Shown here piece after piece: positions 18,570 through 60,592 of a DNA stretch of 64,000 nt; position 1 is the stretch's first letter, and each line of letters opens with the position of its first letter. The notes under the pieces are model-generated. The model did no database searches and had not been told where the DNA came from. It worked only from the letters and a program-made list of their open reading frames with translations. The DNA lies in IMG/VR virus record IMGVR_UViG_3300015261_000002, positions 124,001 through 188,000 of that record; one strand, 5' to 3'. Made by a program: the position numbers and the translations under genes.

Positions 18570-21500
18570 ATGGGGTTCCAAACGCGCACTGCGACCCGTG
18601 GTAACACGACGGTCGACTACACCAAGATTCGTGAGAACATCAAGAATGTGTCGCCAGCCATTGCGGCTACCCTGCGCAACGCGACGCCTAAAAATGGGGT
18701 CGCTCCTGATCGTGAGGAAGCTGGTGGTACTAAGACCGTCAACGAATATAAGCTTCATCGGCTGAGTAACATCATCAGCAATAACATCAACTCGGCATAT
18801 GACCTTCGGTCTATCACGCCGATGATTGACAAGGCCAACCTGATCTGGAACACGATCATCCTGTACCCTAACGGGAAACAGGACAAGATGTTGACCTACG
18901 ACACGCTGAGTTCGAAAATCAAGAATGCGGCTTTGCACACCAGCCTACTGGGCATCTGGGACAATTATTACACCAATGACTATAAGATCGAGTCGCTTTT
19001 AAAGAAGATGCTCGACGATATCATGTGGAATACCGGCAGTTACGCGATCTTTAACCTGAGCCGTCCCGGCCTGGATTACTTGATCAACGGTTCCGAAGTT
19101 GATCCCTCCAAACGGAGTGGTAACGAAGAATTCATCAAGGCAAAGAGCGAACTGGATCGTGAGTTCGTAAGCCGTGATGGCAAGACCCTTGTGAAGAACA
19201 AGGGACGCTTTGTTCGCAACCCATTCGCGGCTAAGGCGGCTAACTCCGATAACGCCTCTGTCAGTGGCCTGGAAGCGTTGTTCACGACCGGTTCTGATCT
19301 GGCGGAAGAAGAGTTCTCCATCTTTGACCCGTCCAGCGATGAGGGCAAGCTGTTTAATATCACCATTACCGATAACCCGGCAGTGTTGTACCTCCAGAAG
19401 TTCCAGGAGGCTCGACGCGACCAGGACATCAAGTCGGTCATGGGGGCAGAGAGTTTTGATAACATCATCTCTTCTGCCATGATGACTCAGAAGCAGCGTG
19501 ACGCTGAAGCGGCTAAAGCCGAAGAAGACGCCAACAAGGGCGGCAAGAAGAAGGGCGGCGAAGGTAAGGCAGGTAAACCTGAACTGGCCACCACTCAGAA
19601 CCTGAACGAAGACCAGCTTAATGCTTTGAATGCTTCGGTGTTCAAGCCACGTAACCTGCGCAGTCAGTCGTTGCAGTTCATCAAGTCAAACGACTCGCTG
19701 AGCGTAGCACCTTACGGCCGTGGTCTGAGCTGGCATATTCCTTCTGAAGCGATCTTCCCGATCCACTTCAACGGCAGTAACGGCAAGATCGATGACTACA
19801 TCATCCTGCTCGATCCGGAAACTGGTGCGTTCCTGAAGAACACTGATGACCCAGAGTTCTACCAGTCGTTGGCGAAGAACAAAGACAGCATCACAAACAA
19901 GAACAAGATGGGCAGCGACAACTCGCTCGTCTCCAGTTTGCGTACGGTGCAGTCTGGCAAGCCGTGTGACTTCGACATGTCTGAGTTTGCTGACATGGCC
20001 GAGAAGAGCATTGTGCGTCAGTTCATCTCGTCTGTTTATAGCGACAAGGCCAACAGCATCAGCATTACCCTAGACGAAGAGGTCAACAAGATCTTCCTGG
20101 CGCGTATCTTTAAAGGCCAGGGTGTGCGTTGCCTGTACGTTCCGGGTGAAGCTGTTTCGTACGGTGCTATCAAGTTCAACCGTCTGGGCGTTGGTCAGTC
20201 CCTGACTCAAGCAGCAAAGATGCAGATTGCTCGTCTGGCAGCTTACGACGTAGCGGATGCATTGGCTAACCTGGAAGCAGCTCAGCCTCATACCGAGATG
20301 GTTATCAACATCGAGAAAGAGGACTCTGATCCAGAACACACCATTGCGCTTGCTCGTGCAACCTTCTTCGACACCAACCCTAAGCTGCACTCCATCCTGT
20401 CGACGGCCCAGCTGTCGGTTCCTCAGGTAGTGGATGCACTGCGGGAAGCGTCGCTGTCGGTTAAGGTAAACGCAGGCGACAACGTTCACTTGCCGACACC
20501 GGATATCACTACGCAGGGTAAACCTAAGGATAACTTCCAGCCGGTGGACCAGGCCAGTCGTGATGCCGTAATGAACTCCATCGCAAACTACTTCAACCTG
20601 CCTCGTGCATGGCTGGATGTATCGGACGATCAGAACAACTTCAAGATTGAAGCGGTGACTGAGTACGAGATGGTGTTCAACCAAGCTGTTAACTGGCAGG
20701 AAATGATCTGCGACTTCTTGATTGACTTCCAGCGTAAACATGCTCGAGTCAATGGTCCTCTGATGCAAGACCTTGTTCAGTGCATTCTGGAAAACAAGAA
20801 CCTGTGGAAGCCTGATAGCAAAGAAGCCCTGGAAGGCAGCGATGAGGAAAAGGTCAAGGTTATCCTGTCTGACTTCTTCTCCTCGGTTTATTGCTACCTG
20901 CCGGTGCCTACCAGTACTGAATCCACTAACAAGCTGAAGGAAAGCTTGGACGCGGTGACTGCATTGGTGGGTGCGTGGGAAGAGGCTGCGGGTAACAACG
21001 GTGTGCTGCCTCAGATCTTGAAGATGCTCAACATCAACTCCGAAGATTTCACCGACGCGGAAATCAAAGCGATGGTGAAGTCTGCTCTGACCACTGAAGC
21101 ATTCCGCAAGTTTAACTTGCCGATGCCGTTTGATGAGATTGTTAACGAAGGTAAAGGTGGCGGTATCGCTTCGCTTGTGCAGAAAATGCTGCATCAGCGC
21201 ATCAACACCGCTAGCTTCGTGGCAGACCTTATTGATGGGGTGGTTGACTCCAACAAGAAGCTCATTAAACAGTTTGGCAGTAAACTGGCGAAGAAACTTG
21301 AGCCGGACGAACCTGCTGCTGGGGGGGGAGGAGACAATGGTGGGTTGCCTGATGATGATAGCGCGCTTACTGGATCTCCTGATAATGATCTGGGTGCGGG
21401 TGCGGGTCCCGACGATCAAGACGTTGATAATCCTCTCGGGGATAACAGCGATCCTGATGCTGTTGATGCTGACTCCGATACGCCGACTGATAAAGACGAC

Positions 21501-21584
21501 GATGCGGAGCCTAAAGACGACAAGCCGGCTGATGATGAACCGGGTGGGAAGAACTTCAACCCATGGCCAGGTGACAAAGCGTAA
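18570..21584 (+). CDS. Portal protein candidate (phiKZ gp129-like)
   Basis: Start ATG 18570 (SD GAGG), about 1004 aa. Long acidic disordered C-tail, G-x-E processing motifs in the N-terminal third, and position divergent from the gp128-like gene. Confidence 0.72.
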   Translation: MGFQTRTATRGNTTVDYTKIRENIKNVSPAIAATLRNATPKNGVAPDREEAGGTKTVNEYKLHRLSNIISNNINSAYDLRSITPMIDKANLIWNTIILYPNGKQDKMLTYDTLSSKIKNAALHTSLLGIWDNYYTNDYKIESLLKKMLDDIMWNTGSYAIFNLSRPGLDYLINGSEVDPSKRSGNEEFIKAKSELDREFVSRDGKTLVKNKGRFVRNPFAAKAANSDNASVSGLEALFTTGSDLAEEEFSIFDPSSDEGKLFNITITDNPAVLYLQKFQEARRDQDIKSVMGAESFDNIISSAMMTQKQRDAEAAKAEEDANKGGKKKGGEGKAGKPELATTQNLNEDQLNALNASVFKPRNLRSQSLQFIKSNDSLSVAPYGRGLSWHIPSEAIFPIHFNGSNGKIDDYIILLDPETGAFLKNTDDPEFYQSLAKNKDSITNKNKMGSDNSLVSSLRTVQSGKPCDFDMSEFADMAEKSIVRQFISSVYSDKANSISITLDEEVNKIFLARIFKGQGVRCLYVPGEAVSYGAIKFNRLGVGQSLTQAAKMQIARLAAYDVADALANLEAAQPHTEMVINIEKEDSDPEHTIALARATFFDTNPKLHSILSTAQLSVPQVVDALREASLSVKVNAGDNVHLPTPDITTQGKPKDNFQPVDQASRDAVMNSIANYFNLPRAWLDVSDDQNNFKIEAVTEYEMVFNQAVNWQEMICDFLIDFQRKHARVNGPLMQDLVQCILENKNLWKPDSKEALEGSDEEKVKVILSDFFSSVYCYLPVPTSTESTNKLKESLDAVTALVGAWEEAAGNNGVLPQILKMLNINSEDFTDAEIKAMVKSALTTEAFRKFNLPMPFDEIVNEGKGGGIASLVQKMLHQRINTASFVADLIDGVVDSNKKLIKQFGSKLAKKLEPDEPAAGGGGDNGGLPDDDSALTGSPDNDLGAGAGPDDQDVDNPLGDNSDPDAVDADSDTPTDKDDDAEPKDDKPADDEPGGKNFNPWPGDKA

Positions 21585-21607
21585 ATAGCAAAAAAGAAAG
21601 AACCATA

Positions 21608-21656
21608 GCTAACCCTCCTAGCCTTTGCGGGCTAGGAGGGTTAGCCTTATGGCTGC
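21608..21656. terminator. Bidirectional terminator
   Basis: 16-bp perfect stem GCTAACCCTCCTAGCC / GGCTAGGAGGGTTAGC. Followed by TTATGGCTGC on the plus strand and by a U-rich run on the minus strand. Confidence 0.85.
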
Positions 21657-22277: not shown

Positions 22278-22327
22278 CGTTTCTCTCTCTTTTGGTTACG
22301 GATGGGTTTCTACAAAGGATGTTAACA

Positions 22328-22374
22328 GGACAAAAAAATAAAAAGATGTTACCTGTGCCGTGTTACCGGCACAG
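22328..22374 (-). terminator. Intrinsic terminator in the accessory cassette
   Basis: CUGUGCCG stem, then a long U-tract ending UUUUUUGUCC. Confidence 0.75.
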
Positions 22375-22380
22375 TGTCTA

Positions 22381-29591: not shown

Positions 29592-31784
29592 TTACGGGTT
29601 TACAGGTGCGTTACCTTCGGTAGCGGTAACCAGCTTGTCGATGCCGTCGGTCAGACCTTGGACTTCAACAACCTGTTTAGCCAGCTTGGTCAGCAGGCCA
29701 TCGTCACCCAGGAACTCGTGAGCATCTTCGATGATCAGCGAGCCGATGATGACGTTCAGCGGCCAGTGACGGTAGGTAGGCATGGTCATGACCACACCGA
29801 AGTCCTGTTGGTCACGAGTCACGTTACCCTGCACGACGATGTTCTCTTTCGAGATGTTCACGCCGATGCCGCCCAGCGGGTTGATGAAGTCGTTGGTGGA
29901 GGTGTTCTTCGGAACGATCAGCAGTTGGCCGATTTGGCTGTCGAAGTTGGTCTCAACGATTTGCATCGGGGTCACTGGACCCAGGGAACGAGCGTCGCCC
30001 GAACGCATCAGGAAGCGCGCCAGGTTCTGGTGAACCACGACGGTCCACTCGATCTTGTCGGTGCCACCGTATTCAGCGATCGCAGCCAGGCCGGACTTGG
30101 TGTTCAGCGCAGCGGTGATATCGCTGATTTCGTTCAGGAACACAGCAGCAACGTTGTCGAACACGTCGGCCGAGTCCAGGGACGATACACGGTCCTTGAT
30201 CTTGAACGAACGGTTGATGGCCGCAGCCGAAACGTAGTGCTGACCAGGCAGGACGTTGGAGCCCTGTTGGTTACCAACAACTGGAGAGCCGTCGATCGAG
30301 GTGATGTACTTCAGGTGTTCCTGAGCCACATCGAACGCTTTCTTCGAGCACTGGTTGTTGATCGCGATCGACATCTGCTGAATCGCGAAGTCCAGGGAAC
30401 CCTGGTTGACGTCGTCAGCCGATACTGGGTACTTGACCGAGACCGGGCTGTTGCGACGAACGGACAGACGCTTGTCGGCATCGAACACTTCGATACGGTA
30501 GCCGAAGTTACCACGCGAGGTGTTGGAGACGTTACCGCCCATGTCGATACCAGTAACGGCACCGGCAGTCAGCAGCTTGATCAGAGCCTTTTGAGTGGCG
30601 TCAGCTTTGTGCATGGTGACAACGTTGCCGTTGGTCAGGTCACGCAGGCCGTGGACGGTCACTTGACCCGAGTTCAGACGCAGCTCGTTGGTCTGGCGCT
30701 GGTAGTTGCCGTTCATGCTGATGTTCAGCAGAGGCTCGTAGCCGGCGGTTTTGAACGCAGCGAACAGGGTTTCGCCGACGGTGGCGCCGGTTTTGTCCAG
30801 AACGCTGAAGCCTGGCAGAGCGCGCAGGTGCAGGTTCACTTCACGGTCGTCGGACGACTGGCCTTGGCTGGTAGGGCCGAAGGTGTTGTTCGAAATCGCG
30901 ATGGTGTTCACGAAGAAGTTGACCGCGGTGTTGCCCAGCTTGGCGGAAGCCAGCAGTTCTTTGATGACGAGCGAGTTGGACTCGAGTTCGTCGGTGCTGG
31001 TCCATGGACGTTGGCCAGGAACCTGGGTCAGAGCCAGGAAGTTCGGAATGGTGTTCGGAACTTTCAGGTACTGAGTAGCGTGGGAGCTACGGTTGTAGGC
31101 GTCTGCTTCCGGGTAGGTCGCAGTAGTCGGAGCAACGATGGCCGCGTCGACGAAGAAGTCGCGGTTGTCGTCGTCAGCGTCTTCTGGGTAAACAGCGTGC
31201 ACGGCCAGGACTTCGTCCTTGAACATGTCGCCGGTACGCAGCAGACCGAAGATCGGACGCAGTTCGGAAGCCGACTGCCAGGCCGAGTTGCCGTAGGCGT
31301 ACGAACCGATACCCGCAGCGCGGACTACCAGGTTGGCGCCTTCGTCTTCGTAACGAACGGTGATGGTGGAGAACAGCGCTTCAGCGCCCGGGGTTTGCAG
31401 GTGCGACTGAGCGTTCAGCGTCAGGTTCGCAGCCTTGATGTCCATCTCGCTGCCTTTGAAGTTCTGGAGCGAGAAACCCTCGATACCAGTTACTTCGGCC
31501 AGAGCCTTGGCAGCTTCGTTCATGACCGCCATTTCGGTGCCCGGCACGCCTTTACGGTTCAGGGAACCGGCGAACGCGTCGAACTGCTTTGGCGTGATGG
31601 AGTTGAACAGGGTGGTGAGCTGATGGCTTTCAACGCCGGCAACGGATTTGAGACCGGTGCTGAAGACGTCGAAGCTTTCAGCGCCGATGACGCTGTTGAG
31701 TTGTTGGTTGCCCAGGGCTTCGCGGACGGCGCTGAAGAGGTTTCCGGTATTCTTCAGTGACGCAGTGACTTGTTTAAAGGCCAT
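29592..31784 (-). CDS. Major capsid protein (phiKZ gp120-like)
   Basis: 730 aa, extreme codon bias. Propeptide with repeated G-x-E sites (E36, E52, E84, E102); C-terminal VMTMPTYRHWPLNVIIG. Sits between DnaB and the nvRNAP gene as in phiKZ. Confidence 0.93.
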   Translation of the reverse strand: MAFKQVTASLKNTGNLFSAVREALGNQQLNSVIGAESFDVFSTGLKSVAGVESHQLTTLFNSITPKQFDAFAGSLNRKGVPGTEMAVMNEAAKALAEVTGIEGFSLQNFKGSEMDIKAANLTLNAQSHLQTPGAEALFSTITVRYEDEGANLVVRAAGIGSYAYGNSAWQSASELRPIFGLLRTGDMFKDEVLAVHAVYPEDADDDNRDFFVDAAIVAPTTATYPEADAYNRSSHATQYLKVPNTIPNFLALTQVPGQRPWTSTDELESNSLVIKELLASAKLGNTAVNFFVNTIAISNNTFGPTSQGQSSDDREVNLHLRALPGFSVLDKTGATVGETLFAAFKTAGYEPLLNISMNGNYQRQTNELRLNSGQVTVHGLRDLTNGNVVTMHKADATQKALIKLLTAGAVTGIDMGGNVSNTSRGNFGYRIEVFDADKRLSVRRNSPVSVKYPVSADDVNQGSLDFAIQQMSIAINNQCSKKAFDVAQEHLKYITSIDGSPVVGNQQGSNVLPGQHYVSAAAINRSFKIKDRVSSLDSADVFDNVAAVFLNEISDITAALNTKSGLAAIAEYGGTDKIEWTVVVHQNLARFLMRSGDARSLGPVTPMQIVETNFDSQIGQLLIVPKNTSTNDFINPLGGIGVNISKENIVVQGNVTRDQQDFGVVMTMPTYRHWPLNVIIGSLIIEDAHEFLGDDGLLTKLAKQVVEVQGLTDGIDKLVTATEGNAPVNP

Positions 31785-41450: not shown

Positions 41451-41460
41451 TCCCTTCTCC

Positions 41461-41946: not shown

Positions 41947-41952
41947 AATGGA

Positions 41953-43008: not shown

Positions 43009-43072
43009 GGTAAAAGTACCTGTTAAAAAGGATATGTAGCAAAACCTATAGCATTCCTCAAAAAACCATATA

Positions 43073-43114
43073 GCAGCCATAAGACTACTAAGGGGGATTG
43101 CTCCCCCTTAGTAG
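43073..43114 (-). terminator. Hairpin terminator
   Basis: 13-bp stem CUACUAAGGGGGA-GCAA-UCCCCCUUAGUAG followed by UCUUAUGGCUGC. Confidence 0.85.
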
Positions 43115-44418: not shown

Positions 44419-44472
44419 AGCTATGTATCCTTTTTCGTTAACGAAGGAAAATTGTGTGTTTAATTAAACGGT

Positions 44473-45486
44473 TTACGCGAAAACACCAAGCACACCATGA
44501 ATGTACCTGTCGGTGTAGCTGACCACCCGAGGAGTGAATCCGCTATAGAATGCCAACGCATTCGCCTCACCAGAGAGAATCTTCTCACCCTCTGCCATGG
44601 CACTTGAACTAACCTTGTCCAACTTACTCAGGTTAGCGTCAACGGTTTTCACCATATCCGACCAGCTCTTGATAAAGGCCAAGTAGCTGTCGTACGACGA
44701 CTTCAAGCGTTTGTGCATAGAGTTGATCTTGTCCAGCTTGTTCAACAGCGCGTTGACTTCAGACTTGGATAAGGTCGTGGAGGACCCCGCCTCAGCAGGT
44801 GCGTCACCACCTATAACATATTTCGGGTGTTTGCCGTCGCCGTAGACGCATTCCCAGACTTTGCCACCTGGCAGAGTGTCAGAGAACGTCGTGTCGCCTT
44901 TTGAATGCGGCAACTTGAACGGAGGATACTTCAACGCCTCGAACTCCTCCACAATCGCGAAGATGTTCTCAGAGGTTGAAGCACCCTTGAGCTTACGGAC
45001 GACAATCAGCTGCTTGTCCAGGTAACTCAGAATTTCTTTGCTGTGCTTATCCAGTGCATCCAACGTGCTCAGCAGAGTGTCCATATCATGCCCAATATGG
45101 CCAACATCGCCATTCGAGGTGATAAGGGCAATCGTGGTCTTGCTGAGGTTCAGCTCGTGATCTTCGATCTTGCTGAAGCTTTGCGTCAGCTTTTTGATCA
45201 AGGTATCGTTGTCGCTGAAAGCACGGTACAAGCCAGCTCCTGCCGCGCCAAGGGCTTTGCCAAACAGGTCGACAGTCTTACCGCCTACCCACTTGCTGAC
45301 TTCAAAGAGGCCAGCGCCAAGTTCTTTGGCGTTCTCCATAAAGTCTTCATTGCCTTCGACCCGGATCTTCATCCGGTGAGGTTCCGCGAGCAACAGGTTA
45401 CCTGCTTTGTGCAGATCGTTCTGTTCCTCACGGGTCTCCAGATGGTTCTCCAGGCAGGTTTGATATAACCGATGGGTGTTGCTCAT
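44473..45486 (-). CDS. Head protein, processed paralog family
   Basis: 337 aa; VEGNE|DFMENAKELG. Confidence 0.65.
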   Translation of the reverse strand: MSNTHRLYQTCLENHLETREEQNDLHKAGNLLLAEPHRMKIRVEGNEDFMENAKELGAGLFEVSKWVGGKTVDLFGKALGAAGAGLYRAFSDNDTLIKKLTQSFSKIEDHELNLSKTTIALITSNGDVGHIGHDMDTLLSTLDALDKHSKEILSYLDKQLIVVRKLKGASTSENIFAIVEEFEALKYPPFKLPHSKGDTTFSDTLPGGKVWECVYGDGKHPKYVIGGDAPAEAGSSTTLSKSEVNALLNKLDKINSMHKRLKSSYDSYLAFIKSWSDMVKTVDANLSKLDKVSSSAMAEGEKILSGEANALAFYSGFTPRVVSYTDRYIHGVLGVFA

Positions 45487-45497: not shown

Positions 45498-46811
45498 TTA
45501 GGGCGTGTTGGCCTTAACCGAGAGGTTAGACAGCTCGATCAAGCCGTGGATGATCAAGGTCAGGTAGCTGGTCAGAGCGGCGCGCAGGTTCAGCAGCTCC
45601 ATTTGGTTACGACGAACAATCGAGGAGAAGGCAGTGAGTACCTTGTCTTTCAGTTCATCGTCCATCTGCGACTCGTAGATACCTTTGGCAACATCGTTGT
45701 AATCGCTGTCCGCCAGTTTGTACTTGTCGCCGGCCTCGTACACCTTGCTCCATTCCTTCAGCAGTTCTTTCAAATGCTTTGCAATGATCTTGATCTGCTG
45801 GGACGATAGGCTCTTCACTTCATTACCCAGTTTCGGGTAAATCACTTCAGAACTGTTTTCGAAGCCGGTGAGTTCTTCGTTGAGGTAGATGTAGAGGAAC
45901 TGATCCACATCTTCCGGCGTGTGCATCCGATAGTTCGGCTTGCTCTGGCGGATATCGATGAAGTACGCACCACCCATCAGCTCCACGGATTGTTTCGCAG
46001 TAACACGACCCGTAGAGAAGTCCTTGTTGACCTTGTTACATTCCTTGAACGGTGTCGACGGCAGTTGCGACGGCAGGTCCAGGAAACGCTCCAGGCCAAG
46101 TTGTTGATCCAAGCCCGCAAACCCGCCAAAGAAGCTCAGGACGGCGTTCATGTTGTTCTTGCTGTTGAGGTAGTAGTTCGAGCTCACCGCCGAGATAGTG
46201 CGGCTCAGCTTGCTCACATCACCTGTCCAGTCACCGGAGATCTGACCATTGATCTTGAACAGGTTAAACAGACGAGCGCCCAGCAACAGGTTCTCACGAC
46301 CTTCATCGAAGCGCGGGGTGGTTTCAATCCCACGTTCCAATGCGTCCACCGCTTCAATCAAACTGTCATGGGTTTGAGTAAAGACGATGTAGGCTTCTTT
46401 AAAGCCGTCGTTGATGCGAACCACTACTTCCTTGGACTTACGGAAGAAGTCACCCAGGAAGCTCTCACAGCCCATCAGGCGCGTCAGAAGGTAATCTTCC
46501 GGCATGAGGGTGCGTCCGAGCGCTTCAGCGCCCTCAACAGCGTCCAAACCGCTTACAGGCGGAATGTCGACATTGGAACGTACCAACGAACCGTCCATGG
46601 CGTTTGCCAGCTCGGGTGTCACCTGGTGAGGTTCAGTGCCTTCAAGCACCGCCTTAACCATGTTGACACGATCCTTGCTGTCATCCAGACGGTTCTGGAA
46701 GCGATCGAGATCACCGGTGTCTTTGGCCAGGCTGACAATCTCCGCAGACTTAACAGCGGAGATAGCGGCCATTTCGGCCGCCAGCTGGAGTTCCTGGTTA
46801 ATTTGACCCAT
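45498..46811 (-). CDS. Head protein (phiKZ gp92-like position)
   Basis: Start ATG 46811 (MGQINQEL), 437 aa; GTE, GAE and MGCE|SFLGDFF motifs. Confidence 0.65.
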   Translation of the reverse strand: MGQINQELQLAAEMAAISAVKSAEIVSLAKDTGDLDRFQNRLDDSKDRVNMVKAVLEGTEPHQVTPELANAMDGSLVRSNVDIPPVSGLDAVEGAEALGRTLMPEDYLLTRLMGCESFLGDFFRKSKEVVVRINDGFKEAYIVFTQTHDSLIEAVDALERGIETTPRFDEGRENLLLGARLFNLFKINGQISGDWTGDVSKLSRTISAVSSNYYLNSKNNMNAVLSFFGGFAGLDQQLGLERFLDLPSQLPSTPFKECNKVNKDFSTGRVTAKQSVELMGGAYFIDIRQSKPNYRMHTPEDVDQFLYIYLNEELTGFENSSEVIYPKLGNEVKSLSSQQIKIIAKHLKELLKEWSKVYEAGDKYKLADSDYNDVAKGIYESQMDDELKDKVLTAFSSIVRRNQMELLNLRAALTSYLTLIIHGLIELSNLSVKANTP

Positions 46812-47316
46812 AGTAGGCTTCTCCTCCAAGCAGCAGGAAGATACGCCCGACAACACCAGCGCCTACACCTGCCATGAGACGATAGAGATCGTTGTCGAAG
46901 ACTTTGTCCCCATCCTGCAAGAAGGCCGCATGGCCACCTGTACGGGAGGTAGGGGTATAAGTGCCGTAACGGCTGCTGGCAGCATCCTGGAGTTTGTTTT
47001 CCTGGATACCAACAGAGGTGATCAGCTGACGATGACCACAACGACCATTCAGGTAATGAATGATGTCGCGGATCAGTTCAGACAAAGGACCCTTGCCGTT
47101 GTCGAAGTTGACTTCCATCCACCCTGCAAAGGAAGTACCGCACAGGGCAGTGACTTCGCGCAGGGTCTCGATGGTTACGTCACCTTTCATGATGAGCTCA
47201 AAATCCTGGTACGCATCCTGACGGAGGTACTTCAGGTTCTTGAACATGGTTGCCAGTTCACCTTCACTCAGGTTAGCACTGACGTACCCGTTGTTACCCC
47301 GGCGAAATTCAGGCAT
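46798..47316 (-). CDS. Conserved hypothetical protein (phiKZ gp91-like position)
   Basis: Start ATG 47316 (MPEFRRG), 172 aa, overlap-coupled on both sides. Confidence 0.6.
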   Translation of the reverse strand: MPEFRRGNNGYVSANLSEGELATMFKNLKYLRQDAYQDFELIMKGDVTIETLREVTALCGTSFAGWMEVNFDNGKGPLSELIRDIIHYLNGRCGHRQLITSVGIQENKLQDAASSRYGTYTPTSRTGGHAAFLQDGDKVFDNDLYRLMAGVGAGVVGRIFLLLGGEAYYGSN

Positions 47317-48190
47317 AGTCGGCCTCGATCTCTGCAATGGTGTGGTCGTTGCGAATGATCTTGTCCTGGTAGATCTCGATACGGCGATCGAGGTCAGGGT
47401 CATTCGTGCCGTTGCGCTTGTTGATCGCCTGGGAGATCTTCATCGCAAAGTACTCGTTGTCACGACGCATCTTCTCGATACGCATGCCCTGAATCTTGCT
47501 CCAGCCCAGACCCCACCAGAACATCGGGTTAACCAGGTGAACACCGAAACCCTTGTTCAGCAGGTCGACTTGCGTCTTGCCGCCGGTGCTTTCCATAACG
47601 TCCAGGGACGTCTGGGTGATTTCGATGTCCGGCAGGTTGTTCATGTTCTTCATGATCAACGACGCGCCGCGCAGCAGGTCAACGGTGAAGTTGTTGTAGA
47701 ACAGCGCAGTGCCGTTGATGAACTTCATGTCGATCGGTTGCAGGTAACGCTCCGGCTCAACACCCTGGTTGTTCATGGTCAACAGTACGTCGTAGATCAT
47801 GCGGGTGTAACGCAGCCAGAAGTTCAGGTACTCGATGACGTTCAGCAGGTTCGCTTGCTTGACGGTCATCAGCTTACCGTCCCACAGGCTTTCCTTGTAG
47901 CTGTTGACCGCTTTGGTCAGCTCGGTGGTCAGTGCATCGAGAGCGCCGAGACCGTGCTTGTTGATACCGACCAGATCGCCACCACGGAAGCCAGCGGAGT
48001 TGACCGCCTTCTTCAGGGAGCGGGTGATGACCCAATGCTCAGCCTGATCGCTCAGGTCGATATCGTTCATCTCGATGTTTTCCAGACCTGCCTTCAGGTC
48101 TTCACCGGCTACCTTGATGCTCAGGATAGCAGACAGGATTTCGTTCTTCTTTACCGCTTTGACTTTCCCGATGTAGGAGAAAATATCCAT
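47309..48190 (-). CDS. Inner-body/head protein (phiKZ gp90-like)
   Basis: About 293 aa, TGATG-coupled, SD GGAGG; size and position follow the gp89-like gene. Confidence 0.65.
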   Translation of the reverse strand: MDIFSYIGKVKAVKKNEILSAILSIKVAGEDLKAGLENIEMNDIDLSDQAEHWVITRSLKKAVNSAGFRGGDLVGINKHGLGALDALTTELTKAVNSYKESLWDGKLMTVKQANLLNVIEYLNFWLRYTRMIYDVLLTMNNQGVEPERYLQPIDMKFINGTALFYNNFTVDLLRGASLIMKNMNNLPDIEITQTSLDVMESTGGKTQVDLLNKGFGVHLVNPMFWWGLGWSKIQGMRIEKMRRDNEYFAMKISQAINKRNGTNDPDLDRRIEIYQDKIIRNDHTIAEIEADYA

Positions 48191-49287
48191 CACATGCCTC
48201 CGTTCAGCAACTTGACCAGGTCCGCCAGGGTGTTGGAGCCCGAATCTTTCTTCGATTTGATGGCGATATCCTTGCGGGTGTAAATTTCCGGCATATCGCT
48301 GCCATGGGTGTAGAAGGTGTAGATACCGCGATCTTCGTTGCAGACCACGATGGTGTTTGCCACCACAGCCTTGAAGATACCTTCACGCGACTTTGGATCA
48401 CGGAAGCGTTTACCGATGTCCAGTTCCAGCTGGGTAGCTGCTTCCTGGGAGATGATGAACGAGTTGGCCATGCTGTTGAAGCTGACCACGCCGGTACGCA
48501 CAGCAGTGAGCTTGTTACCGGTTTCACGACGCAGGGCTTCTTTGTAGTAGCCCGACATCTCTTCGTTCTTGATGTTGAAGCGTTCCTTGATGATGTCCTT
48601 GCCGCTGAGGAACTCAGGGTAGGTGATCTCACGGGTCTTGGCCATGGTCAAGCGAGCAAAGAAGCCCTCTTCGATCTTGGCAGCAGAGAAGGTACGCTTG
48701 AGGTCCTTCGTGGACATCGGCACCGGGATCTGACGGAAGGTCAGTGGGAAGTCGATCTTGCCACCACGTTCGGTGTGCAGGGTAGCGTTAACCACCTTAC
48801 CGATCGCGAGCGGGGTGTACTCTTGCAGGTCGGGCATGGTTTTGCCGCCGACTTGAACGTAGTCCTGCTCGGGGTTTTTCTTTGCTTCGTTCGGGATGTT
48901 GTCGTCGAAAGCTTCGCAGCCTTGGATCGACATCATGCCGGCACGGTTCGGGTTGATGGAACCGATAATGTCCTTGATCTGCACGCCCATCGACACGGTG
49001 CCTTCCAGCGCCAGGTGAGTCAGGGTGGCGACCACGTCACGCATCATGACGATTTGCATGAGGTCGGACATGAATTCCTGGTGCAGAAGGGACTGTTCAA
49101 CGCCGACCATTGGCGCAATGATCGCGCGGTTTGCGCTCTGATGCACCGATGTGGTCGAGACCACATTGTATGAACGTTGAACCTGGCCCGCCACTTTGGC
49201 GGCGGAGTTTATGTCTTTGCTATCGGGATAAAACTTACTTGCAATGTCCAGCAGGTAAGACCCCAGCCCTAATACGTTACCAATCAT
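48190..49287 (-). CDS. Inner-body/head protein (phiKZ gp89-like)
   Basis: 365 aa; IQGCE|AF processing motif; divergent from the gp88/gp87-like pair. Confidence 0.65.
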   Translation of the reverse strand: MIGNVLGLGSYLLDIASKFYPDSKDINSAAKVAGQVQRSYNVVSTTSVHQSANRAIIAPMVGVEQSLLHQEFMSDLMQIVMMRDVVATLTHLALEGTVSMGVQIKDIIGSINPNRAGMMSIQGCEAFDDNIPNEAKKNPEQDYVQVGGKTMPDLQEYTPLAIGKVVNATLHTERGGKIDFPLTFRQIPVPMSTKDLKRTFSAAKIEEGFFARLTMAKTREITYPEFLSGKDIIKERFNIKNEEMSGYYKEALRRETGNKLTAVRTGVVSFNSMANSFIISQEAATQLELDIGKRFRDPKSREGIFKAVVANTIVVCNEDRGIYTFYTHGSDMPEIYTRKDIAIKSKKDSGSNTLADLVKLLNGGM

Positions 49288-54154: not shown

Positions 54155-55665
54155 AGCAATTTACCTGCTCCGATTTGCTTGGTGAAGTTGTTGAGGTTGG
54201 TCTTAACCCCACCAATATCACTTTGGATGGCGAAGTTCACGTTGGCGGTCAACTTCTCGCCAAACGTTTTTGCATCGGCATCCTTGATGAACACACGACC
54301 TTCGATGATCGGGCTCAGACCGCGAGAGCGTGCCTCAGCAACGATCTTCTCGACCGCCTCGATATCGCCGACCACACCACTGTAGTAGTAGGCATGGATG
54401 CGACCGTACCATTCAACCAGGCTGACGATCTGCCGTTCAACGCGGAGAACTTCCTTGTTGATGGAGTAGCACATCTGGCTGAAGTTACGGCAAGCGACGC
54501 TCAACATCTGGTAGTCGGATAGCAGTTGCGGTGCGTTGTAGTAGGTCGCCATCGCGCTGATCTTTTCAGAGTCAGACTTGTCGATGATCTCGCCTAGTGC
54601 TTTCCAGTTGACTTTCGAGATATCAACCTCGTCGTCCACCAGTTCCTGGTAACGCACGTTCAGACGCTGGATCTCGAGCAGGGTAGCGGACACATCCACA
54701 CCGGCTACAGTCGAAGCACTTGCCACAACTTCGGTCTTCAGGCGGTTCTGTACCTGGTCAAACTTGTTGGCCAGTTCTTCGTTCGAGAAGTCAAGGCTAT
54801 ACAGATCCTTGTACAGTTTGCTCATGAGACCAGAGATCTCTTCAACGCCAAAGGTCAGCAGCGTTTCGTTCATTGCCTTGGTGATAACAATCACTTCGGT
54901 AGACGATTCACCGGCGACGTGGTTACCCGACTTGTGACGCACACGAGAACGGTTGTACTCGTCGAGGATCACTTTCTTCAGACGCTTCTGAGCGATCGTA
55001 ACCTTGTCAGTGGCCTGCTTGATCTTCACGTTCAGCTGCTGGATCAACGGAACACTGGCCGCCAGCTTCTTCACTTGATCGATATCGCTATCGAGCTTGT
55101 TCTTCAGCAGGTGGATCTGTGCAACACGATCCTTGTCCTTTGGCAGGCTGCCGAGGAACTTCTCGACGTTGTACTCAGCGACGTTGAAGCCAAAGCTGAT
55201 CAGCGTGTCTTCGAACTCTTTCTTCAGATCGCCGAGGCTGTCATTGATGGCTTTGGTGATCCGTTCCGACTTGCGGAAACCGAAGATCCCTTTAACCATG
55301 TCGACAACCCAGTCGATGGCCATGCGGATGTAACGAATGATGGTTTCGATGAAGTCTTTGAAACCGGTGTAGACCGCACTGAAGAAGCCTTCAGCGCCCA
55401 TGCGAGCGTTGCGCTCCGAAGGGAACGGGTCATAGTTCTCGACGCCTTTGAGTTTGAGGTGGCGGGCAACCTGCTTGGAGAAACGACCGAGGCTCAGTTG
55501 TTCGGAACCCATCACCATAACGGTGGCGTTGTTCTGTTCACTGACCTGGTAGTATTCAGTCAGGTCGATACGTTGTTTGTTTTCGCCAGGCTGATACGAA
55601 TCAACCGGCTCCGCATTACCGTACTGCTGGTAATCGTCAATCTTGGTAGTGGCGGAGTCACTCAC
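54151..55665 (-). CDS. Head/ejection protein, processed family
   Basis: 504 aa; RMGAE|GFFSAVYTGFKDFIETIIRYIRMAIDWV, followed by coiled coils. Confidence 0.7.
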   Translation of the reverse strand: MSDSATTKIDDYQQYGNAEPVDSYQPGENKQRIDLTEYYQVSEQNNATVMVMGSEQLSLGRFSKQVARHLKLKGVENYDPFPSERNARMGAEGFFSAVYTGFKDFIETIIRYIRMAIDWVVDMVKGIFGFRKSERITKAINDSLGDLKKEFEDTLISFGFNVAEYNVEKFLGSLPKDKDRVAQIHLLKNKLDSDIDQVKKLAASVPLIQQLNVKIKQATDKVTIAQKRLKKVILDEYNRSRVRHKSGNHVAGESSTEVIVITKAMNETLLTFGVEEISGLMSKLYKDLYSLDFSNEELANKFDQVQNRLKTEVVASASTVAGVDVSATLLEIQRLNVRYQELVDDEVDISKVNWKALGEIIDKSDSEKISAMATYYNAPQLLSDYQMLSVACRNFSQMCYSINKEVLRVERQIVSLVEWYGRIHAYYYSGVVGDIEAVEKIVAEARSRGLSPIIEGRVFIKDADAKTFGEKLTANVNFAIQSDIGGVKTNLNNFTKQIGAGKLL

Positions 55666-56053
55666 GGCCGGCCTCCAGTTCTTTTACCAGGTAGTCGGTC
55701 AGAACGGAGCAGGCCGGCAGCTCGCCAACGTCCACGTCATTCACGATGGTGGTGAACTCTTTCTTGCACGGCAGGGTGCCGGTGTTCATCATCACACCGT
55801 TCAGCATGCCGATGCGCACTTGAGCGGTCTTGTGGATCAGCGGGGCTGGGATAGGGGATACCTTGTTCCACTTGTCGAGCATGGCCCAGGCTTTCTCATC
55901 CATCTCGGTGGTCCAACCGCCCAGACGGTACGAACGACGGATCAGGGCACGGGCGAACGGTTCGGCCAGCAGCTTGCTCTGCTCGATGGGACAGGTGATA
56001 CCTTTTTCGGTCAGGGCTTTCTTGAATTCAACAACATGGATCAAATGCGACAT
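55658..56053 (-). CDS. Small conserved hypothetical protein
   Basis: 131 aa, overlap-coupled in the operon. Confidence 0.6.
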   Translation of the reverse strand: MSHLIHVVEFKKALTEKGITCPIEQSKLLAEPFARALIRRSYRLGGWTTEMDEKAWAMLDKWNKVSPIPAPLIHKTAQVRIGMLNGVMMNTGTLPCKKEFTTIVNDVDVGELPACSVLTDYLVKELEAGRE

Positions 56054-56080: not shown

Positions 56081-57484
56081 TTAGAATTCGTACGTCTTGT
56101 TTTCTTCTGGACTCTTGTCCGTTCCGTCACGACGCGCTTTCAGGTTGGCCAGTTTTACAGCAATGGTGTTCACCTCGTGGTTGGCGACCACAGAAGTGTA
56201 ATGTTCAACTTCTTGGGCTTTAAAGTCAGACTGACTGAACACCCAACCCATGAAGCGGTGGATCACGGTACTCTCATACCAAGGACGCAGGTCTTTCGCA
56301 TGGTTCAGCAGTTGCTGCACTTCATCTGCCAGGGCATTCTTTTCAGAGGCCGGCATCTTCGTGTCCTCTTTCAGCTTTTGGATCAGCTGACGGACAGCAT
56401 CTTCAAACCGACGGTGGTCAGCGTTATAGACGCCCGAGTAACCTTTGCTGAAGTAGTTCAGAACAAAGATAAACATATAGAAGACCATGGCCATGAACAA
56501 AGCACCGGCGACGCCGATAGAGATCGTTACCGAGAGCCAGGCAGGCAATGCAATGATCGTGGTCACTGCGGCAATCATCAGGCTGTTGACAACCGTTTGG
56601 ATGCAACCCTGGTCAGTCAGGATGCCGATCGCTGCGATAATGCCCTTGTCACAGCCCATGCGGATGGCGTACATGTCAGCCACAACTTCGGACGACATCG
56701 ACTCAACCCCTACCGACAAACTGCGTCGCATATTACGTTGGGCGATTAATTTATCGAAGTAGAGGAAGACAGTCTTGTCATCCTGTTCTTGGGCGAGCAT
56801 TTGCAGCTCACCTTGTTTGGCCGCTGGAACATCCAGCAGAGAAGCAACATCCTTGAGCACTACAACGCGATCTGAGACGTCTTTAGCCTCGCGATAGTAG
56901 AGCAGGGCGCTCTTCAGGTAGAGGTTGTCAGACGCGACTGTGAGCAGCATCATGCAACCGCTGAACACATGACCGAGTTCGTGGGCGATCGCACCTGCCA
57001 GGATACCCGGCAACGGTACGCCAAACTTCTTCACCTTATCGGCTGGGAAGGTAGCGTTCAGGTCAGGGTTGATCTGGAAGGTCACGGGTACGGTTTGGAA
57101 GGAACCGAGGACCTTACCACTGGTGTAATCGATGCCACCTTTAAACACCTTGTCCTTGTTCTGGGTAAACCAGCGGTACAGGGTGGTTTGAGTTGGCTTC
57201 AGCAGGTCGTCTACCAGTGCGTTGTTCAGCACATGGTTGGGGGAGAAGTAACCGGCGTCAACAGACAGGTTTCCGCTCTTGGAGAACTTCATGTCCACGT
57301 TCTTGAAACCCGTGAACTCCTCGATGAGGTCTTTGATGCCTGGGATGGCTTCTTTACTCAGAACACCGTCGGGACCAATCTGACTTTCGAGGTACAGCGA
57401 CAGCTTGCGGTAGAAGTCAGTGGACTGGAAGTTAATGAACTCCAACCCTCCGACGGGTCGTTTCAAAAAATCCATCGAGATCAT
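56081..57484 (-). CDS. Membrane-anchored HExxH zinc metallopeptidase-like protein in the head operon
   Basis: 467 aa. GAIAHELGH plus downstream SEVVADMYA (gluzincin/M48-like E-x-x-A-D), then a hydrophobic stretch of about 50 aa. Confidence 0.65.
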   Translation of the reverse strand: MISMDFLKRPVGGLEFINFQSTDFYRKLSLYLESQIGPDGVLSKEAIPGIKDLIEEFTGFKNVDMKFSKSGNLSVDAGYFSPNHVLNNALVDDLLKPTQTTLYRWFTQNKDKVFKGGIDYTSGKVLGSFQTVPVTFQINPDLNATFPADKVKKFGVPLPGILAGAIAHELGHVFSGCMMLLTVASDNLYLKSALLYYREAKDVSDRVVVLKDVASLLDVPAAKQGELQMLAQEQDDKTVFLYFDKLIAQRNMRRSLSVGVESMSSEVVADMYAIRMGCDKGIIAAIGILTDQGCIQTVVNSLMIAAVTTIIALPAWLSVTISIGVAGALFMAMVFYMFIFVLNYFSKGYSGVYNADHRRFEDAVRQLIQKLKEDTKMPASEKNALADEVQQLLNHAKDLRPWYESTVIHRFMGWVFSQSDFKAQEVEHYTSVVANHEVNTIAVKLANLKARRDGTDKSPEENKTYEF

Positions 57485-57567
57485 GCACCTGTACTCCTCA
57501 AAGATATTTATTACTGGGACGCCATTGGTATAGCGCTAAAAGCGGGCATAAAATGCAGGATAAACCC

Positions 57568-59427: not shown

Positions 59428-59428
59428 A

Positions 59429-59477
59429 GCAGCTATAAACCCTCCTACTCCCTTTGTCGGGGAGTAGGAGGGTTTAT
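59429..59477. terminator. Bidirectional terminator
   Basis: 18-bp stem ATAAACCCTCCTACTCCC / GGGAGTAGGAGGGTTTAT preceded by GCAGCT. Confidence 0.85.
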
Positions 59478-59512
59478 TCACGATCGATGCTCAGAACGCC
59501 TTACAGACGTTA

Positions 59513-60592
59513 TTAAGCAGCGATACCAAAGACCTTGTTCAGGGCATTGGACGCTTCGGTCACGCGGGTGTAGTTGGCTTCGATCAGCTTGGACGCTTTA
59601 ACGCCAGTACCAACGATCACACGCAGAGCGGCGATGTCTTTCTGGAGTTCAGTTTTGTCTTTCGCTTCTTTGGCCTTCTTCATCTTCGCTTCAGCGCTGG
59701 CCAGCAGTTTCTCGATGGCCGACTTCTTGTTCTTGAATTCGTCGGAGAACGCCTTCAGGGACACGATGTTGGTGGCGCAGTCTTTGCTGAACTGGATGGC
59801 AGCAGCAGGCTCGGTGATGGAGGTGGCTTTTTCCAGCTTGGCCAGGAACTGAGCGTCCCGGGTCATGAACTTGGTAACCAGGCCAGCCATGTCGATGGCG
59901 TTGTCGGTGAAGTCGGTGTTACCCGACAGGTGACCGGCGGCTTGCTTTTCCTTGTCGCTGCCCTGGGAAGTGGCGAGGGTCAGGAATGCTTTCTTCGCCT
60001 TCACAGCCGCAGCCACAACGTTGGCCAGAGTTGCTTGAGCCTTCTTGTTCATCTTGCCCATTTCTTTCAGGGCAGCCTTGACGGCGTCGCGCTTCTCTTT
60101 CAGGCCCTTCTTCTTGGCGTCAGCGATTTCTTTCGCAGTTGCTTCGGAAACGTTGCCGGCCATCGCGTTCAGTTGCTTGTCGGCGGTGGCTTCGTCCTGG
60201 GTACCCGAAACAGCGGCTTGGAGTTCAGCAGCGTTTTCGTTGCACGCTTCTTTGGCCACTTCAGCGTCTTTGGCGCTGTCACGGTTGAAGAAGAAGTCCC
60301 AGATGGACTTGAAGGTTTTAGCGATGTAGTCATACACCGCTTTGAAGCCGTTGCCGATGGCGGAGAACACGCCTTCGTTACCGGTCACTTGAGCGCCGGT
60401 AATAATGCCAGCAGCACTGAGCACGCCTTGAGCATAACGCTGAGCGTCAGTCAGGGAGATCGATTCGGTACCCGCAACGTCCAGCTGTTCAGCCGTATCG
60501 TTGAGGGCGTCGAACATGATCTCGACGTGCGGTACGTCGGGGAGACCAAAGCCGTCGCCATCAGGTTGGTAGGAGCCTTCTACGTATTCCAT
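59513..60592 (-). CDS. Abundant head/ejection protein paralog
   Basis: 359 aa, capsid-like codon bias; AGTE and TGNE|GVFSAIGNGFKAVYDYIAKTFKSIWDFFF; K/A-rich body like 40023..41450. Confidence 0.7.
   Translation of the reverse strand: MEYVEGSYQPDGDGFGLPDVPHVEIMFDALNDTAEQLDVAGTESISLTDAQRYAQGVLSAAGIITGAQVTGNEGVFSAIGNGFKAVYDYIAKTFKSIWDFFFNRDSAKDAEVAKEACNENAAELQAAVSGTQDEATADKQLNAMAGNVSEATAKEIADAKKKGLKEKRDAVKAALKEMGKMNKKAQATLANVVAAAVKAKKAFLTLATSQGSDKEKQAAGHLSGNTDFTDNAIDMAGLVTKFMTRDAQFLAKLEKATSITEPAAAIQFSKDCATNIVSLKAFSDEFKNKKSAIEKLLASAEAKMKKAKEAKDKTELQKDIAALRVIVGTGVKASKLIEANYTRVTEASNALNKVFGIAA

What the first reader, a model, noticed from the sequence alone, without database searches (positions are those of the whole stretch)
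18570..60592. Near-universal G-x-E maturation motif implies a glycine-specific prohead protease
Candidate cleavage sites in the N-terminal regions of head proteins are almost all G-x-E. Capsid: GAE36, GVE52, GTE84, GIE102. Portal: GNE, GLE, GAE. 43150 gene: GAE, GME, GAE, GME. 45498 gene: GTE, GAE, GCE. 54151 gene: GSE, GVE, GAE. 59513 gene: GTE, GNE. 41953 gene: GNE, GTE. 40023 gene: GME, GTE. 44473 gene: GNE. 48190 gene: GCE. Established specificities are S/A/G-x-E for phiKZ gp175, A-x-E for SPN3US gp245 and I/L-x-E for T4 gp21. A glycine-restricted P3 would be a lineage-specific variant, and the motif can predict head cargo genome-wide. The protease gene is outside this window.
Basis: partly seen in the sequence, partly recalled or inferred. 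Interest (0 to 1): 0.62.

Follow-up and report, generated by a model that had tools for sequence, protein, structure and literature searches.

The report
Glycine-type cleavage motif of jumbo-phage head protease
The head proteins of this EL-like jumbo phage carry conserved V-x-G-x-E sites that line up with experimentally mapped maturation cuts in phiKZ and SPN3US, so its prohead protease very probably needs glycine three residues before the cut; this holds across a whole clade of jumbo phages and has not been tested at the bench.

Summary
The window is bases 124001-188000 of a complete 224.7-kb phiKZ-related jumbo phage. Its nearest cultured relatives are Erwinia phage RisingSun and Pseudomonas phage EL.

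Counted naively across the proteome, G-x-E is not enriched. About 28 sites in 14 proteins stand out in four ways:
- They stay G-x-E in every orthologue that keeps the Glu (133 of 133), while P2 varies.
- They share unselected flanks: V at P5, S/G/A at P1', F/L at P2'.
- Several align with mapped cuts: phiKZ capsid GLE-163, and SPN3US ATE-130, portal ATE-161 and AQE-254, and gp45 ASE-20.
- They include two C-terminal sites in the phage's own S80 protease, which lies outside the window. Both are G-x-E in 100 of 103 aligned proteases.

A flank-only score that ignores P3 recovers G in this clade, S in phiKZ and A in SPN3US.

The glycine reading is therefore well supported by computation. It is shared by the EL, RisingSun, Miami, pTD1 and OBP groups and is not specific to this lineage. 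It also falls within phiKZ's known S/A/G range. Bare G-x-E cannot predict cargo; the extended motif plus conservation can. Some listed sites (capsid GTE84, GTE75 in the 45498 gene) are not conserved. No mature N-termini are available.

The parts
29592..31784 (-). Major capsid protein (730 aa). The predicted propeptide has G-x-E sites at E36, E52 and E102 (codons 31677-31685, 31629-31637, 31479-31487). E102 is the predicted maturation cut. GSE113 is kept only in the EL-like subclade. GTE84 is not conserved. GAE135 lies in the mature N-arm.
   Evidence: Pfam PhiKZ_MCP, 458 bits; 62% identity to RisingSun gp83. GIE102 aligns with phiKZ GLE-163 and SPN3US ATE-130, both mapped experimentally (PMC11297242, PMC10052503). 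There are 6 G.E in the first 135 aa against 0.78 expected.
18558..21584 (+). Portal protein (1008 aa) with a long N-terminal propeptide. Sites are GNE190, GLE239 and GAE298 (codons 19119-19127, 19266-19274, 19443-19451).
   Evidence: phrog_3004. All three sites are G-x-E in RisingSun, EL, Miami, pTD1 and OBP. E190 aligns with SPN3US gp81 ATE-161 and E298 with AQE-254 (PMC5694885, PMC10052503).
43150..44418 (-). Inner-body (internal head) protein, phiKZ_IP family. Sites are GAE14, GME77, GAE116 and GME133.
   Evidence: PF12699, 135 bits; phrog_5750 internal head protein. All four sites are G-x-E in six relatives with variable P2.
45498..46856 (-). Inner-body protein paralogue (phiKZ_IP). Sites are GAE111 and GCE131. 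GTE75 is not conserved.
   Evidence: PF12699, 128 bits; conservation; high P3-blind flank scores.
44473..45486 (-). Third phiKZ_IP paralogue, with a single site, GNE47.
   Evidence: PF12699, 31 bits. The context V-x-G-N-E is kept in the 78% relative, RisingSun and Miami; pTD1 has G-E-E.
48190..49287 (-). Head protein, orthologue of SPN3US gp50. The site is GCE125. GVE64 is not a conserved G site.
   Evidence: phrog_3239. G-x-E in all six relatives; phiKZ has SAE at the aligned position. SPN3US gp50 is cut at ATE-127, in the same region (PMC10052503).
54151..55665 (-). Virion structural protein. Sites are GSE55 and GAE92. GVE76 is kept in all relatives except EL.
   Evidence: phrog_14541; conservation; flank score 9.9 for E92.
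56081..57484 (-). Orthologue of SPN3US gp45, with a short propeptide. The site is GLE15.
   Evidence: G-x-E in all six relatives. It aligns exactly with SPN3US gp45 ASE-20, a mapped cut (PMC10052503, Table 2).
41953..43080 (-). Head protein carrying the shared two-site N-terminal cassette. Sites are GNE74 and GTE98.
   Evidence: Conserved in RisingSun, EL and the 78% relative with variable P2 and local identity 0.23-0.33; cassette alignment; top flank score 10.5.
40023..41555 (-). Head protein with deep sites GME266 and GTE298. The cassette-like segment lies at about residues 258-348.
   Evidence: phrog_27616, with phrog_35992 matching residues 258-348; sites conserved in RisingSun, EL and the 78% relative.
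59513..60592 (-). Head protein carrying the shared two-site N-terminal cassette. Sites are GTE43 and GNE73.
   Evidence: The N-terminal 100 aa are shared with genome 62198-63229 and with paralogues in RisingSun and EL. Both G-x-E sites are kept in all of them.
55658..56053 (-). 131-aa protein whose encoded C-terminus is G-R-E followed by the stop codon. It may mimic a cleavage product. Its function is unexplained.
   Evidence: G-x-E immediately before the stop codon is kept in the 78% relative, RisingSun and EL, but not in Miami, pTD1 or OBP.

Best explanation
The window holds the head-gene block of an EL/RisingSun-like, phiKZ-related jumbo phage. The phage's S80 serine prohead protease lies outside the window, at genome 25173-26033 on the minus strand. 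It is 286 aa long with catalytic residues H79, S164 and D188.

I infer that this protease trims the capsid, portal, inner-body and other internal head proteins after Glu. The site reads V(P5)-x-G(P3)-x-E(P1), cut, then [S/G/A](P1')-[F/L](P2'). About 25 sites in 11 window genes fit. Three more substrates lie elsewhere in the genome, one of them the protease's own C-terminal tail (GLE207, GTE250).

The predicted mature capsid N-terminus is Gly103, after GIE102.

Glycine at P3 appears to be obligatory across the clade made up of EL-, RisingSun-, Miami-, pTD1- and OBP-like phages. By contrast, phiKZ accepts S/A/G and SPN3US accepts A. The hydrophobic anchor sits one residue further from the cut (P5) than in phiKZ and SPN3US (P4).

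Shown here: protease homology, fold and catalytic triad; motif conservation; positional equivalence with mapped sites. Inferred: that cleavage happens, and that the glycine requirement lies in the enzyme's S3 subsite.
For: - Protease: 32% identity to phiKZ gp175 (E 2e-20); Pfam Peptidase_S80, 204 bits against a 23.4-bit cut-off; catalytic H/S/D columns invariant; AF2 model with mean pLDDT 84, whose top three PDB matches are T4 gp21 5JBL (probability 1.0, TM 0.57-0.59).
- P3 invariance: 28 sites give 140 site-by-genome pairs. Glu is kept in 133 of them, and P3 is G in all 133, while P2 varies.
- Deep conservation: G.E is kept through RisingSun, EL and at least two of Miami, pTD1 and OBP in 19 of 106 cases within the first 300 aa. 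No other P3 residue exceeds 7%, and beyond residue 300 the figure for G is 3%.
- Unselected flanks: P5 is V in 51% of sites, P1' is S/G/A in 77%, P2' is F/L/M/I in 86%.
- P3-blind test: a flank-only score trained on Miami, pTD1 and OBP puts G at P3 in 8 of the top 10 and 13 of the top 20 Glu positions in this genome, against a 6.4% background. The same kind of score ranks S first in phiKZ and A first in SPN3US, as experiments found.
- Positional matches to mapped cuts: capsid E102 with phiKZ E163 and SPN3US ATE-130; portal E190 with ATE-161 and E298 with AQE-254; gp45 orthologue E15 with ASE-20; protease E207 with phiKZ ALE-210 and near SPN3US AQE-203.
- Protease tail: both sites are G-x-E in 100 of 103 aligned proteases.
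- Clustering of G.E within N-termini: z = 5.7 in pTD1 and OBP, 3.1 in the 78% relative, 2.5 in EL, 2.0 here. Controls: phiKZ S, z = 3.0; SPN3US A, z = 2.1.
Against: - No mature N-terminus or semi-tryptic peptide is available for any member of the clade. The RisingSun mass-spectrometry paper reports no processing and its supplements hold no peptide lists.
- The naive proteome-wide count shows no G.E enrichment.
- The site list was chosen as G.E in this genome, so the flank model is partly circular. The independent support comes from non-training hits in pTD1, OBP and RisingSun and from the distant-relative model.
- A few S/A-x-E tripeptides are conserved with variable P2 inside substrates (SAE39 in the 45498 gene, AVE148 in the 43150 gene). 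A minor tolerance for S or A is therefore not excluded.
- Invariance of glycine could reflect a need of the substrate backbone and not a closed S3 pocket.
- The complex prediction gave no verdict.
Confidence: 0.72

Rival explanations
1. The sites are real cleavage sites, but the protease has the same broad small-residue tolerance as phiKZ gp175 (S/A/G). On this view glycine is fixed in the substrates for another reason. One candidate is a backbone turn or bulge that lets the P5 valine reach the hydrophobic pocket; another is inheritance from a glycine-using ancestor.
For: G at P3 is within phiKZ's known range, and the phiKZ capsid cut is GLE-163 (PMC11297242). P3 at the autocleavage position is A, S or G in different S80 lineages. 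The anchor residue is shifted by one position in this clade, which hints at a conformational role for glycine. Two S/A-x-E tripeptides are conserved inside substrates.
Against: G to A and G to S are single-base changes. None is seen in 133 of 133 retained sites across relatives whose capsid identity falls to 30%, while P2 changes freely. A and S are not enriched among the top P3-blind flank hits in any of the seven clade genomes.
Confidence: 0.18
2. The conserved G-x-E elements are structural or assembly motifs, such as helix caps or scaffold contacts, and are not cut.
For: Some conserved G.E tripeptides clearly are structural. Examples are helicase GLE99, GFE150 in the 758-aa protein, and capsid GAE135 in the mature N-arm.
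Against: The candidate sites lie in poorly conserved segments (local identity 0.2-0.5) and have variable P2. They coincide with experimentally mapped cuts in phiKZ and SPN3US, where P3 is S or A instead. They also occur in the protease's own tail at the known autocleavage position.
Confidence: 0.06
3. The pattern is chance or a composition effect in Gly/Glu-rich N-termini.
For: Genome-wide G.E is at 0.91 of expectation and the N-terminal total is not enriched.
Against: Composition-preserving shuffles never reach the observed count (0 of 5000). Conservation, flanking residues and cross-genome prediction cannot be explained by composition.
Confidence: 0.01

Closest known systems
phiKZ gp175 (MEROPS/Pfam S80 type peptidase) and its head substrates
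   Same: The protease family, catalytic triad and C-terminal autocleavage position are the same. Both cut after Glu with a small residue at P3. The substrate classes match: capsid, portal and phiKZ_IP inner-body proteins. The capsid maturation site is at the aligned position, and in phiKZ it is itself G-L-E (E163).
   Different: phiKZ uses S/A/G at P3, with S and A common (eight A-x-E sites per PMC5694885). Here P3 is G at every conserved site. In the phiKZ sites I could align, the hydrophobic residue is at P4; here it is at P5. The proteases are only 29-32% identical.
SPN3US gp245 and its nine mapped substrates
   Same: SPN3US shows a narrowed single-residue P3 preference within the same family. 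Its orthologous substrates are cut at aligned positions: gp75 ATE-130, gp81 ATE-161 and AQE-254, gp45 ASE-20, and the gp245 C-terminal propeptide. Ser is preferred at P1' in both.
   Different: P3 is Ala with Val at P4 (V-A-x-E) in SPN3US, against Gly with Val at P5 (V-x-G-x-E) here. The SPN3US sites are mapped by experiment; these are predicted.
T4 gp21 prohead protease (Peptidase S77; PDB 5JBL)
   Same: The fold matches (top structural match). Both cut after Glu and remove N-terminal propeptides from capsid and internal proteins.
   Different: There is no detectable Pfam S77 match here. The T4 portal is not processed (PMC5694885).
Pseudomonas phage EL and Erwinia phage RisingSun (nearest cultured relatives)
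   Same: The head block is syntenic, capsid identity is 58-62%, and the same G-x-E sites occur at the same positions in every substrate examined.
   Different: Protein identities are only 28-66%. This genome is an uncultured IMG/VR contig. EL carries an extra G-N-E in a capsid propeptide insertion.

Membership tests
Peptidase S80 (phiKZ gp175-type prohead protease) | Sequence match to the family profile above the curated threshold | tested here: met
   PF20034 Peptidase_S80, 204.1 bits against a 23.4-bit cut-off, E 2e-60, covering profile positions 1-227 of 229. 32% identity to phiKZ gp175, E 2e-20.
Peptidase S80 (phiKZ gp175-type prohead protease) | Catalytic His-Ser-Asp triad (SPN3US gp245 H77, S153, D178) | tested here: met
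   These residues align with H79, S164 and D188. They are invariant in the nine-genome alignment and in 61 relatives.
Peptidase S80 (phiKZ gp175-type prohead protease) | T4 gp21 / herpesvirus assemblin-like fold | tested here: met
   The AF2 model has mean pLDDT 84.4. Its top three Foldseek PDB hits are T4 gp21 5JBL chains (probability 1.00, TM by target 0.57-0.59, E 3e-3 to 9e-3). HCMV protease is a weak hit at rank 15.
Peptidase S80 (phiKZ gp175-type prohead protease) | C-terminal propeptide removed by autocleavage at the enzyme's own motif | tested here: inconclusive
   Motif copies GLE207 and GTE250 sit at the position of phiKZ ALE-210 and near SPN3US AQE-203, ATE-234 and AQE-246. Both are G-x-E in 100 of 103 aligned proteases. 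Actual cleavage cannot be shown with these tools.
Peptidase S80 (phiKZ gp175-type prohead protease) | Cleavage C-terminal to Glu in head proteins, shown by mature N-termini | not testable with these tools
   This needs virion mass spectrometry. No such data were found for this clade.
phiKZ-like head substrates (capsid, portal, phiKZ_IP inner-body proteins) | Homology of the substrate proteins | tested here: met
   PF25620 PhiKZ_MCP, 458 bits. PF12699 phiKZ_IP, three paralogues at 135, 128 and 31 bits. The portal is a reciprocal best hit to the phiKZ and SPN3US portals.
phiKZ-like head substrates (capsid, portal, phiKZ_IP inner-body proteins) | Predicted sites coincide with experimentally mapped sites in orthologues | tested here: met
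   Capsid E102 with phiKZ E163 and SPN3US E130. Portal E190 with SPN3US E161, and E298 with E254. The gp45 orthologue E15 with SPN3US E20 (PMC11297242, PMC10052503).
Proposed glycine-restricted P3 variant | P3 is Gly at conserved sites, and A or S substitutions are not tolerated in evolution | tested here: met
   P3 is G in 133 of 133 retained site-by-genome pairs. G is the only P3 residue enriched before conserved Glu. P3-blind flank scoring returns G in all seven clade genomes.
Proposed glycine-restricted P3 variant | The enzyme itself discriminates against Ala and Ser at P3 | not testable with these tools
   This needs peptide kinetics or a substrate-bound structure. No model coordinates are available here, and the complex prediction gave no verdict.

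The most novel reading that the evidence does not exclude
A large clade of S80 prohead proteases (EL-, RisingSun-, Miami-, pTD1- and OBP-like phages and about 100 metagenomic relatives) may have an obligate-glycine recognition register, V-x-G-x-E cut [S/G/A]-[F/L]. It would differ from phiKZ and SPN3US at P3 and also by a one-residue shift of the hydrophobic anchor. More than 25 substrate sites per genome, including the enzyme's own tail, would have co-evolved with it. If so, the extended motif would serve as a sequence-only predictor of packaged head and ejection proteins across this clade. The portable two-site N-terminal cassette could then be a natural capsid-targeting tag.
Probability: 0.5. 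Interest if true: 0.55.

Novelty: new variant of a known kind. Interest (0 to 1): 0.45.

Why it matters
Proteolytic maturation decides which of the roughly 50 head proteins of phiKZ-like phages are trimmed, kept or expelled. Only phiKZ, 201phi2-1, SPN3US and T4 have mapped motifs.

If the glycine register holds, it would do three things:
- Give a second example, after SPN3US, of enzyme and substrate motifs narrowing together within one protease family.
- Allow sequence-only prediction of processed head and ejection proteins in many uncultured jumbo phages.
- Point to a short portable propeptide cassette that could be tested as a capsid-loading tag.

The finding refines a known system and is not a new kind of system. 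It stays a prediction until N-termini are measured.

Tried and rejected
- Megablast of 8 kb of the window against the phage collection found nothing. Protein-level searches were needed to place the phage.
- Pfam Peptidase_S77 (T4 gp21) gave no hit in the genome.
- A naive proteome-wide count of G.E in N-termini showed no enrichment. I dropped it as too diluted and replaced it with clustering, conservation and flank tests.
- My first greedy longest-ORF gene call picked antisense shadow ORFs, for example 41344-43026 on the plus strand. I replaced it with a codon-usage caller.
- GAE135 first looked like the capsid maturation site because of its conserved context. I rejected it because it aligns with F-A-E inside the mature N-arm of the phiKZ and SPN3US capsid proteins and is A-A-E in close relatives.
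- The complex prediction of protease residues 1-205 with inner-body protein residues 60-150 scored 0.20 against a mark of 0.32. That is no verdict, and it is not evidence either way.
- Modelling the S3 pocket was not possible, because the structure tool returns no coordinates.
- Several papers could not be read. Four look-ups failed: Thomas 2012 (by PubMed id and by PMC id), Thomas and Black 2013, the 201phi2-1 proteome paper, and the OBP genome paper. I did not attempt the EL proteome papers, which have no PMC id I could use. An earlier remark on a G-x-E motif in EL or OBP therefore cannot be excluded. Full-text searches of the held library found none.
- The RisingSun supplements hold no peptide lists.

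Full report
**What the window is.** The window is bases 124001-188000 of a 224,747-bp IMG/VR virus record with direct terminal repeats, rated complete. It is about 52% G+C. A codon-usage gene call gives 206 genes.

The 730-aa protein at 29592-31784 (minus strand) is the major capsid protein. It matches Pfam PhiKZ_MCP at 458 bits and phrog_3231. It is 62% identical to gp83 of Erwinia phage RisingSun and 58% to gp78 of Pseudomonas phage EL. Gene order in the head block matches both phages.

The 1008-aa protein at 18558-21584 (plus strand) is the portal (phrog_3004). It is a reciprocal best hit to the phiKZ and SPN3US portals. Three genes at 43150, 44473 and 45498 belong to the phiKZ inner-body family PF12699.

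**Checking the observation.** Whether the pattern exceeds chance depends on the test.

- Genome-wide, G.E is at 0.91 of expectation.
- Summed over the first 150 residues of all proteins it is not enriched: 111 observed, 118 expected.
A.E is at 18 against 13.3 and S.E at 5 against 9.5. The other 180 proteins are slightly depleted in G.E, with 87 against 107.7.
- The capsid propeptide alone has 6 G.E against 0.78 expected, and no A.E or S.E.

**Tests without gene selection.** I fetched whole genomes of RisingSun, EL, a relative with 78% capsid identity, Klebsiella phage Miami, Vibrio phage pTD1, Pseudomonas phage OBP, phiKZ and SPN3US. I called genes, found reciprocal best hits and aligned them.

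- G.E tripeptides in the first 150 residues remain G.E in both RisingSun and EL in 29 of 68 cases. The figures are 7 of 77 for A.E and 3 of 56 for S.E. Beyond residue 150, G.E falls to 26 of 128.
- Among Glu residues conserved in a variable context, G is the only enriched P3 residue (odds ratio 2.4, p = 7e-4).
- When conservation through RisingSun, EL and at least two of Miami, pTD1 and OBP is required, G.E survives in 19 of 106 cases within the first 300 residues. No other residue exceeds 7%. After residue 300 the figure for G is 3%.
- A clustering statistic (pairs of X.E within an N-terminus, against shuffles) puts G first in the 78% relative (z 3.1), pTD1 (5.7) and OBP (5.7). G is second in EL (2.5) and third in this genome (2.0); in RisingSun (z 1.8) it is not among the top four residues. 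The controls behave as published, with S at z 3.0 in phiKZ and A at z 2.1 in SPN3US.

**The sites and their flanks.** Twenty-eight sites in 14 proteins meet the conservation criteria. Across their orthologues there are 140 site-by-genome pairs. Glu is retained in 133, and P3 is glycine in all 133, although P2 varies freely.

The flanks were not selected for, yet they are strongly patterned:

| Position | Residues | Share of sites |
|---|---|---|
| P5 | V (78% hydrophobic overall) | 51% |
| P1' | S, G or A | 77% |
| P2' | F, L, M or I | 86% |

The working motif is therefore V-x-G-x-E, cut, then [S/G/A]-[F/L].

A score built only from flanks and blind to P3 was trained on the distant relatives Miami, pTD1 and OBP. 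It places G at P3 in 8 of the top 10 and 13 of the top 20 Glu positions of this genome, against a 6.4% background. A flank score trained on all seven clade genomes finds mostly G among non-training hits in pTD1 (9 of 10), RisingSun (6 of 8) and OBP (7 of 14). It ranks S first in phiKZ and A first in SPN3US. So the flanks are shared across the family and P3 is set by clade.

**Match to mapped cleavage sites.**

| Site here | Context here | Mapped or inferred equivalent | Source |
|---|---|---|---|
| Capsid GIE102 | EVTGIE / GFS | phiKZ GLE-163 (cut between E163 and N164); SPN3US ATE-130 |; PMC11297242, PMC10052503 |
| Portal GNE190 | | SPN3US gp81 ATE-161 |; PMC5694885, PMC10052503 |
| Portal GAE298 | | SPN3US gp81 AQE-254 |; PMC5694885, PMC10052503 |
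| 56081 gene GLE15 | VGGLE / FINFQ | SPN3US gp45 ASE-20 (AVASE / SIGFQ) |; PMC10052503, Table 2 |
| Protease GLE207 | | phiKZ ALE-210; near the SPN3US autocleavage site AQE-203 | |

A second protease site, GTE250, follows GLE207. Both tail sites are G-x-E in 100 of 103 aligned proteases, including 94 metagenomic relatives down to 29% identity.

The protease matches Pfam Peptidase_S80 at 204 bits. Its catalytic residues are H79, S164 and D188. Its AF2 model (mean pLDDT 84) matches T4 gp21 best.

- Capsid GTE84 varies among near relatives (G, S or absent) and is absent in RisingSun and EL.
It aligns with F-A-E in the mature N-arm of the phiKZ and SPN3US capsid proteins and is A-A-E in several relatives, so I do not count it.
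- GTE75 in the 45498 gene is not conserved.
- Further predicted substrates outside the window are genome 52502-53341 (GFE32), genome 62198-63229 (GNE37, GTE66) and the protease itself.

**How general the trait is.** It is shared by five named genera or groups (Elvirus, Risingsunvirus, Miamivirus, Tidunavirus and the OBP group) and many uncultured relatives.

At the autocleavage position, other S80 lineages carry other small residues: A in phiKZ and 201phi2-1, S in RSF1 and PhiEaH1, and G in Ea35-70.

Published motifs are S/A/G-x-E for phiKZ, S/A/G/T-x-E for 201phi2-1 and A-x-E for SPN3US (PMC5694885). SPN3US also prefers V at P4 and S at P1' (PMC10052503).

The present case is therefore a narrowing within a known range. 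It adds a one-residue shift of the hydrophobic anchor, from P4 to P5.

I found no paper in the held library that states a G-x-E motif for this clade. The key phiKZ, 201phi2-1 and OBP papers could not be retrieved, and I had no route to the EL proteome papers.

**Limits.** There are no measured N-termini. The site list began from G.E in this genome. Invariance of glycine could reflect a substrate backbone requirement as much as a closed S3 subsite. The complex prediction gave no verdict. Residue numbering uses the longest ORF for each gene, so true starts may be a few residues downstream for some genes, for example the 45498 gene.

**Verdict.** A glycine-type motif is very likely real and functional. 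It is a clade-wide variant of a known system and not a lineage-specific novelty. Bare G-x-E is not a usable cargo predictor without the flanks and conservation.

Noticed in passing
window 59513-60592 (-) residues 16-114; window 41953-43080 (-) residues ~60-135; genome 62198-63229 (+), outside the window: A portable N-terminal cassette is shared by paralogous head proteins whose C-terminal parts differ. In order it has an acidic leader, a first G-x-E, a spacer of about 25 residues (LT.AQ.Y..G.L), a second G-x-E, and a conserved amphipathic helix (FS.IG.GFK...DYI.K.FK.IWDFFF). RisingSun and EL each carry two or three copies. It resembles a capsid-targeting propeptide joined to an anchor.
   Followed up: partly
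window 55658-56053 (-): This 131-aa protein ends with G-R-E directly before the stop codon. The same G-x-E terminus is kept in the 78% relative, RisingSun and EL, but not in Miami, pTD1 or OBP. The encoded C-terminus therefore looks like a cleavage product. The gene lies between two predicted substrates. Its function is unexplained.
   Followed up: partly
all predicted sites (for example window 31479-31487 and 57440-57448): The hydrophobic anchor (mostly Val) is at P5 in this clade. It is at P4 in the SPN3US logo and in the phiKZ capsid and portal sites that I aligned. Compare V-G-G-L-E here with V-A-S-E in the SPN3US gp45 orthologue.
   Followed up: partly
L132-L135 (protease genes of 201phi2-1, Ea35-70, RSF1 and PhiEaH1): P3 at the protease autocleavage position differs by lineage: P-A-L-E in phiKZ and 201phi2-1, P-S-L-E in RSF1, P-S-C-E in PhiEaH1, and P-G-L-E in Ea35-70. 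The protease tail may report each lineage's P3 preference.
   Followed up: partly
This could reflect avoidance of accidental sites, or it could be noise.
   Followed up: no
window 41344-43026 (+), 43162-44463 (+), 29658-31760 (+): Long antisense shadow ORFs of 430-700 aa overlap real minus-strand head genes. They mislead a longest-ORF gene call. Codon-usage scoring picks the minus-strand genes, which are the ones with homologues.
   Followed up: yes
L018 (EL), capsid gene 19995-22220: The EL capsid propeptide has a 16-residue insertion, relative to this phage, that carries an extra S-G-N-E site.
   Followed up: no
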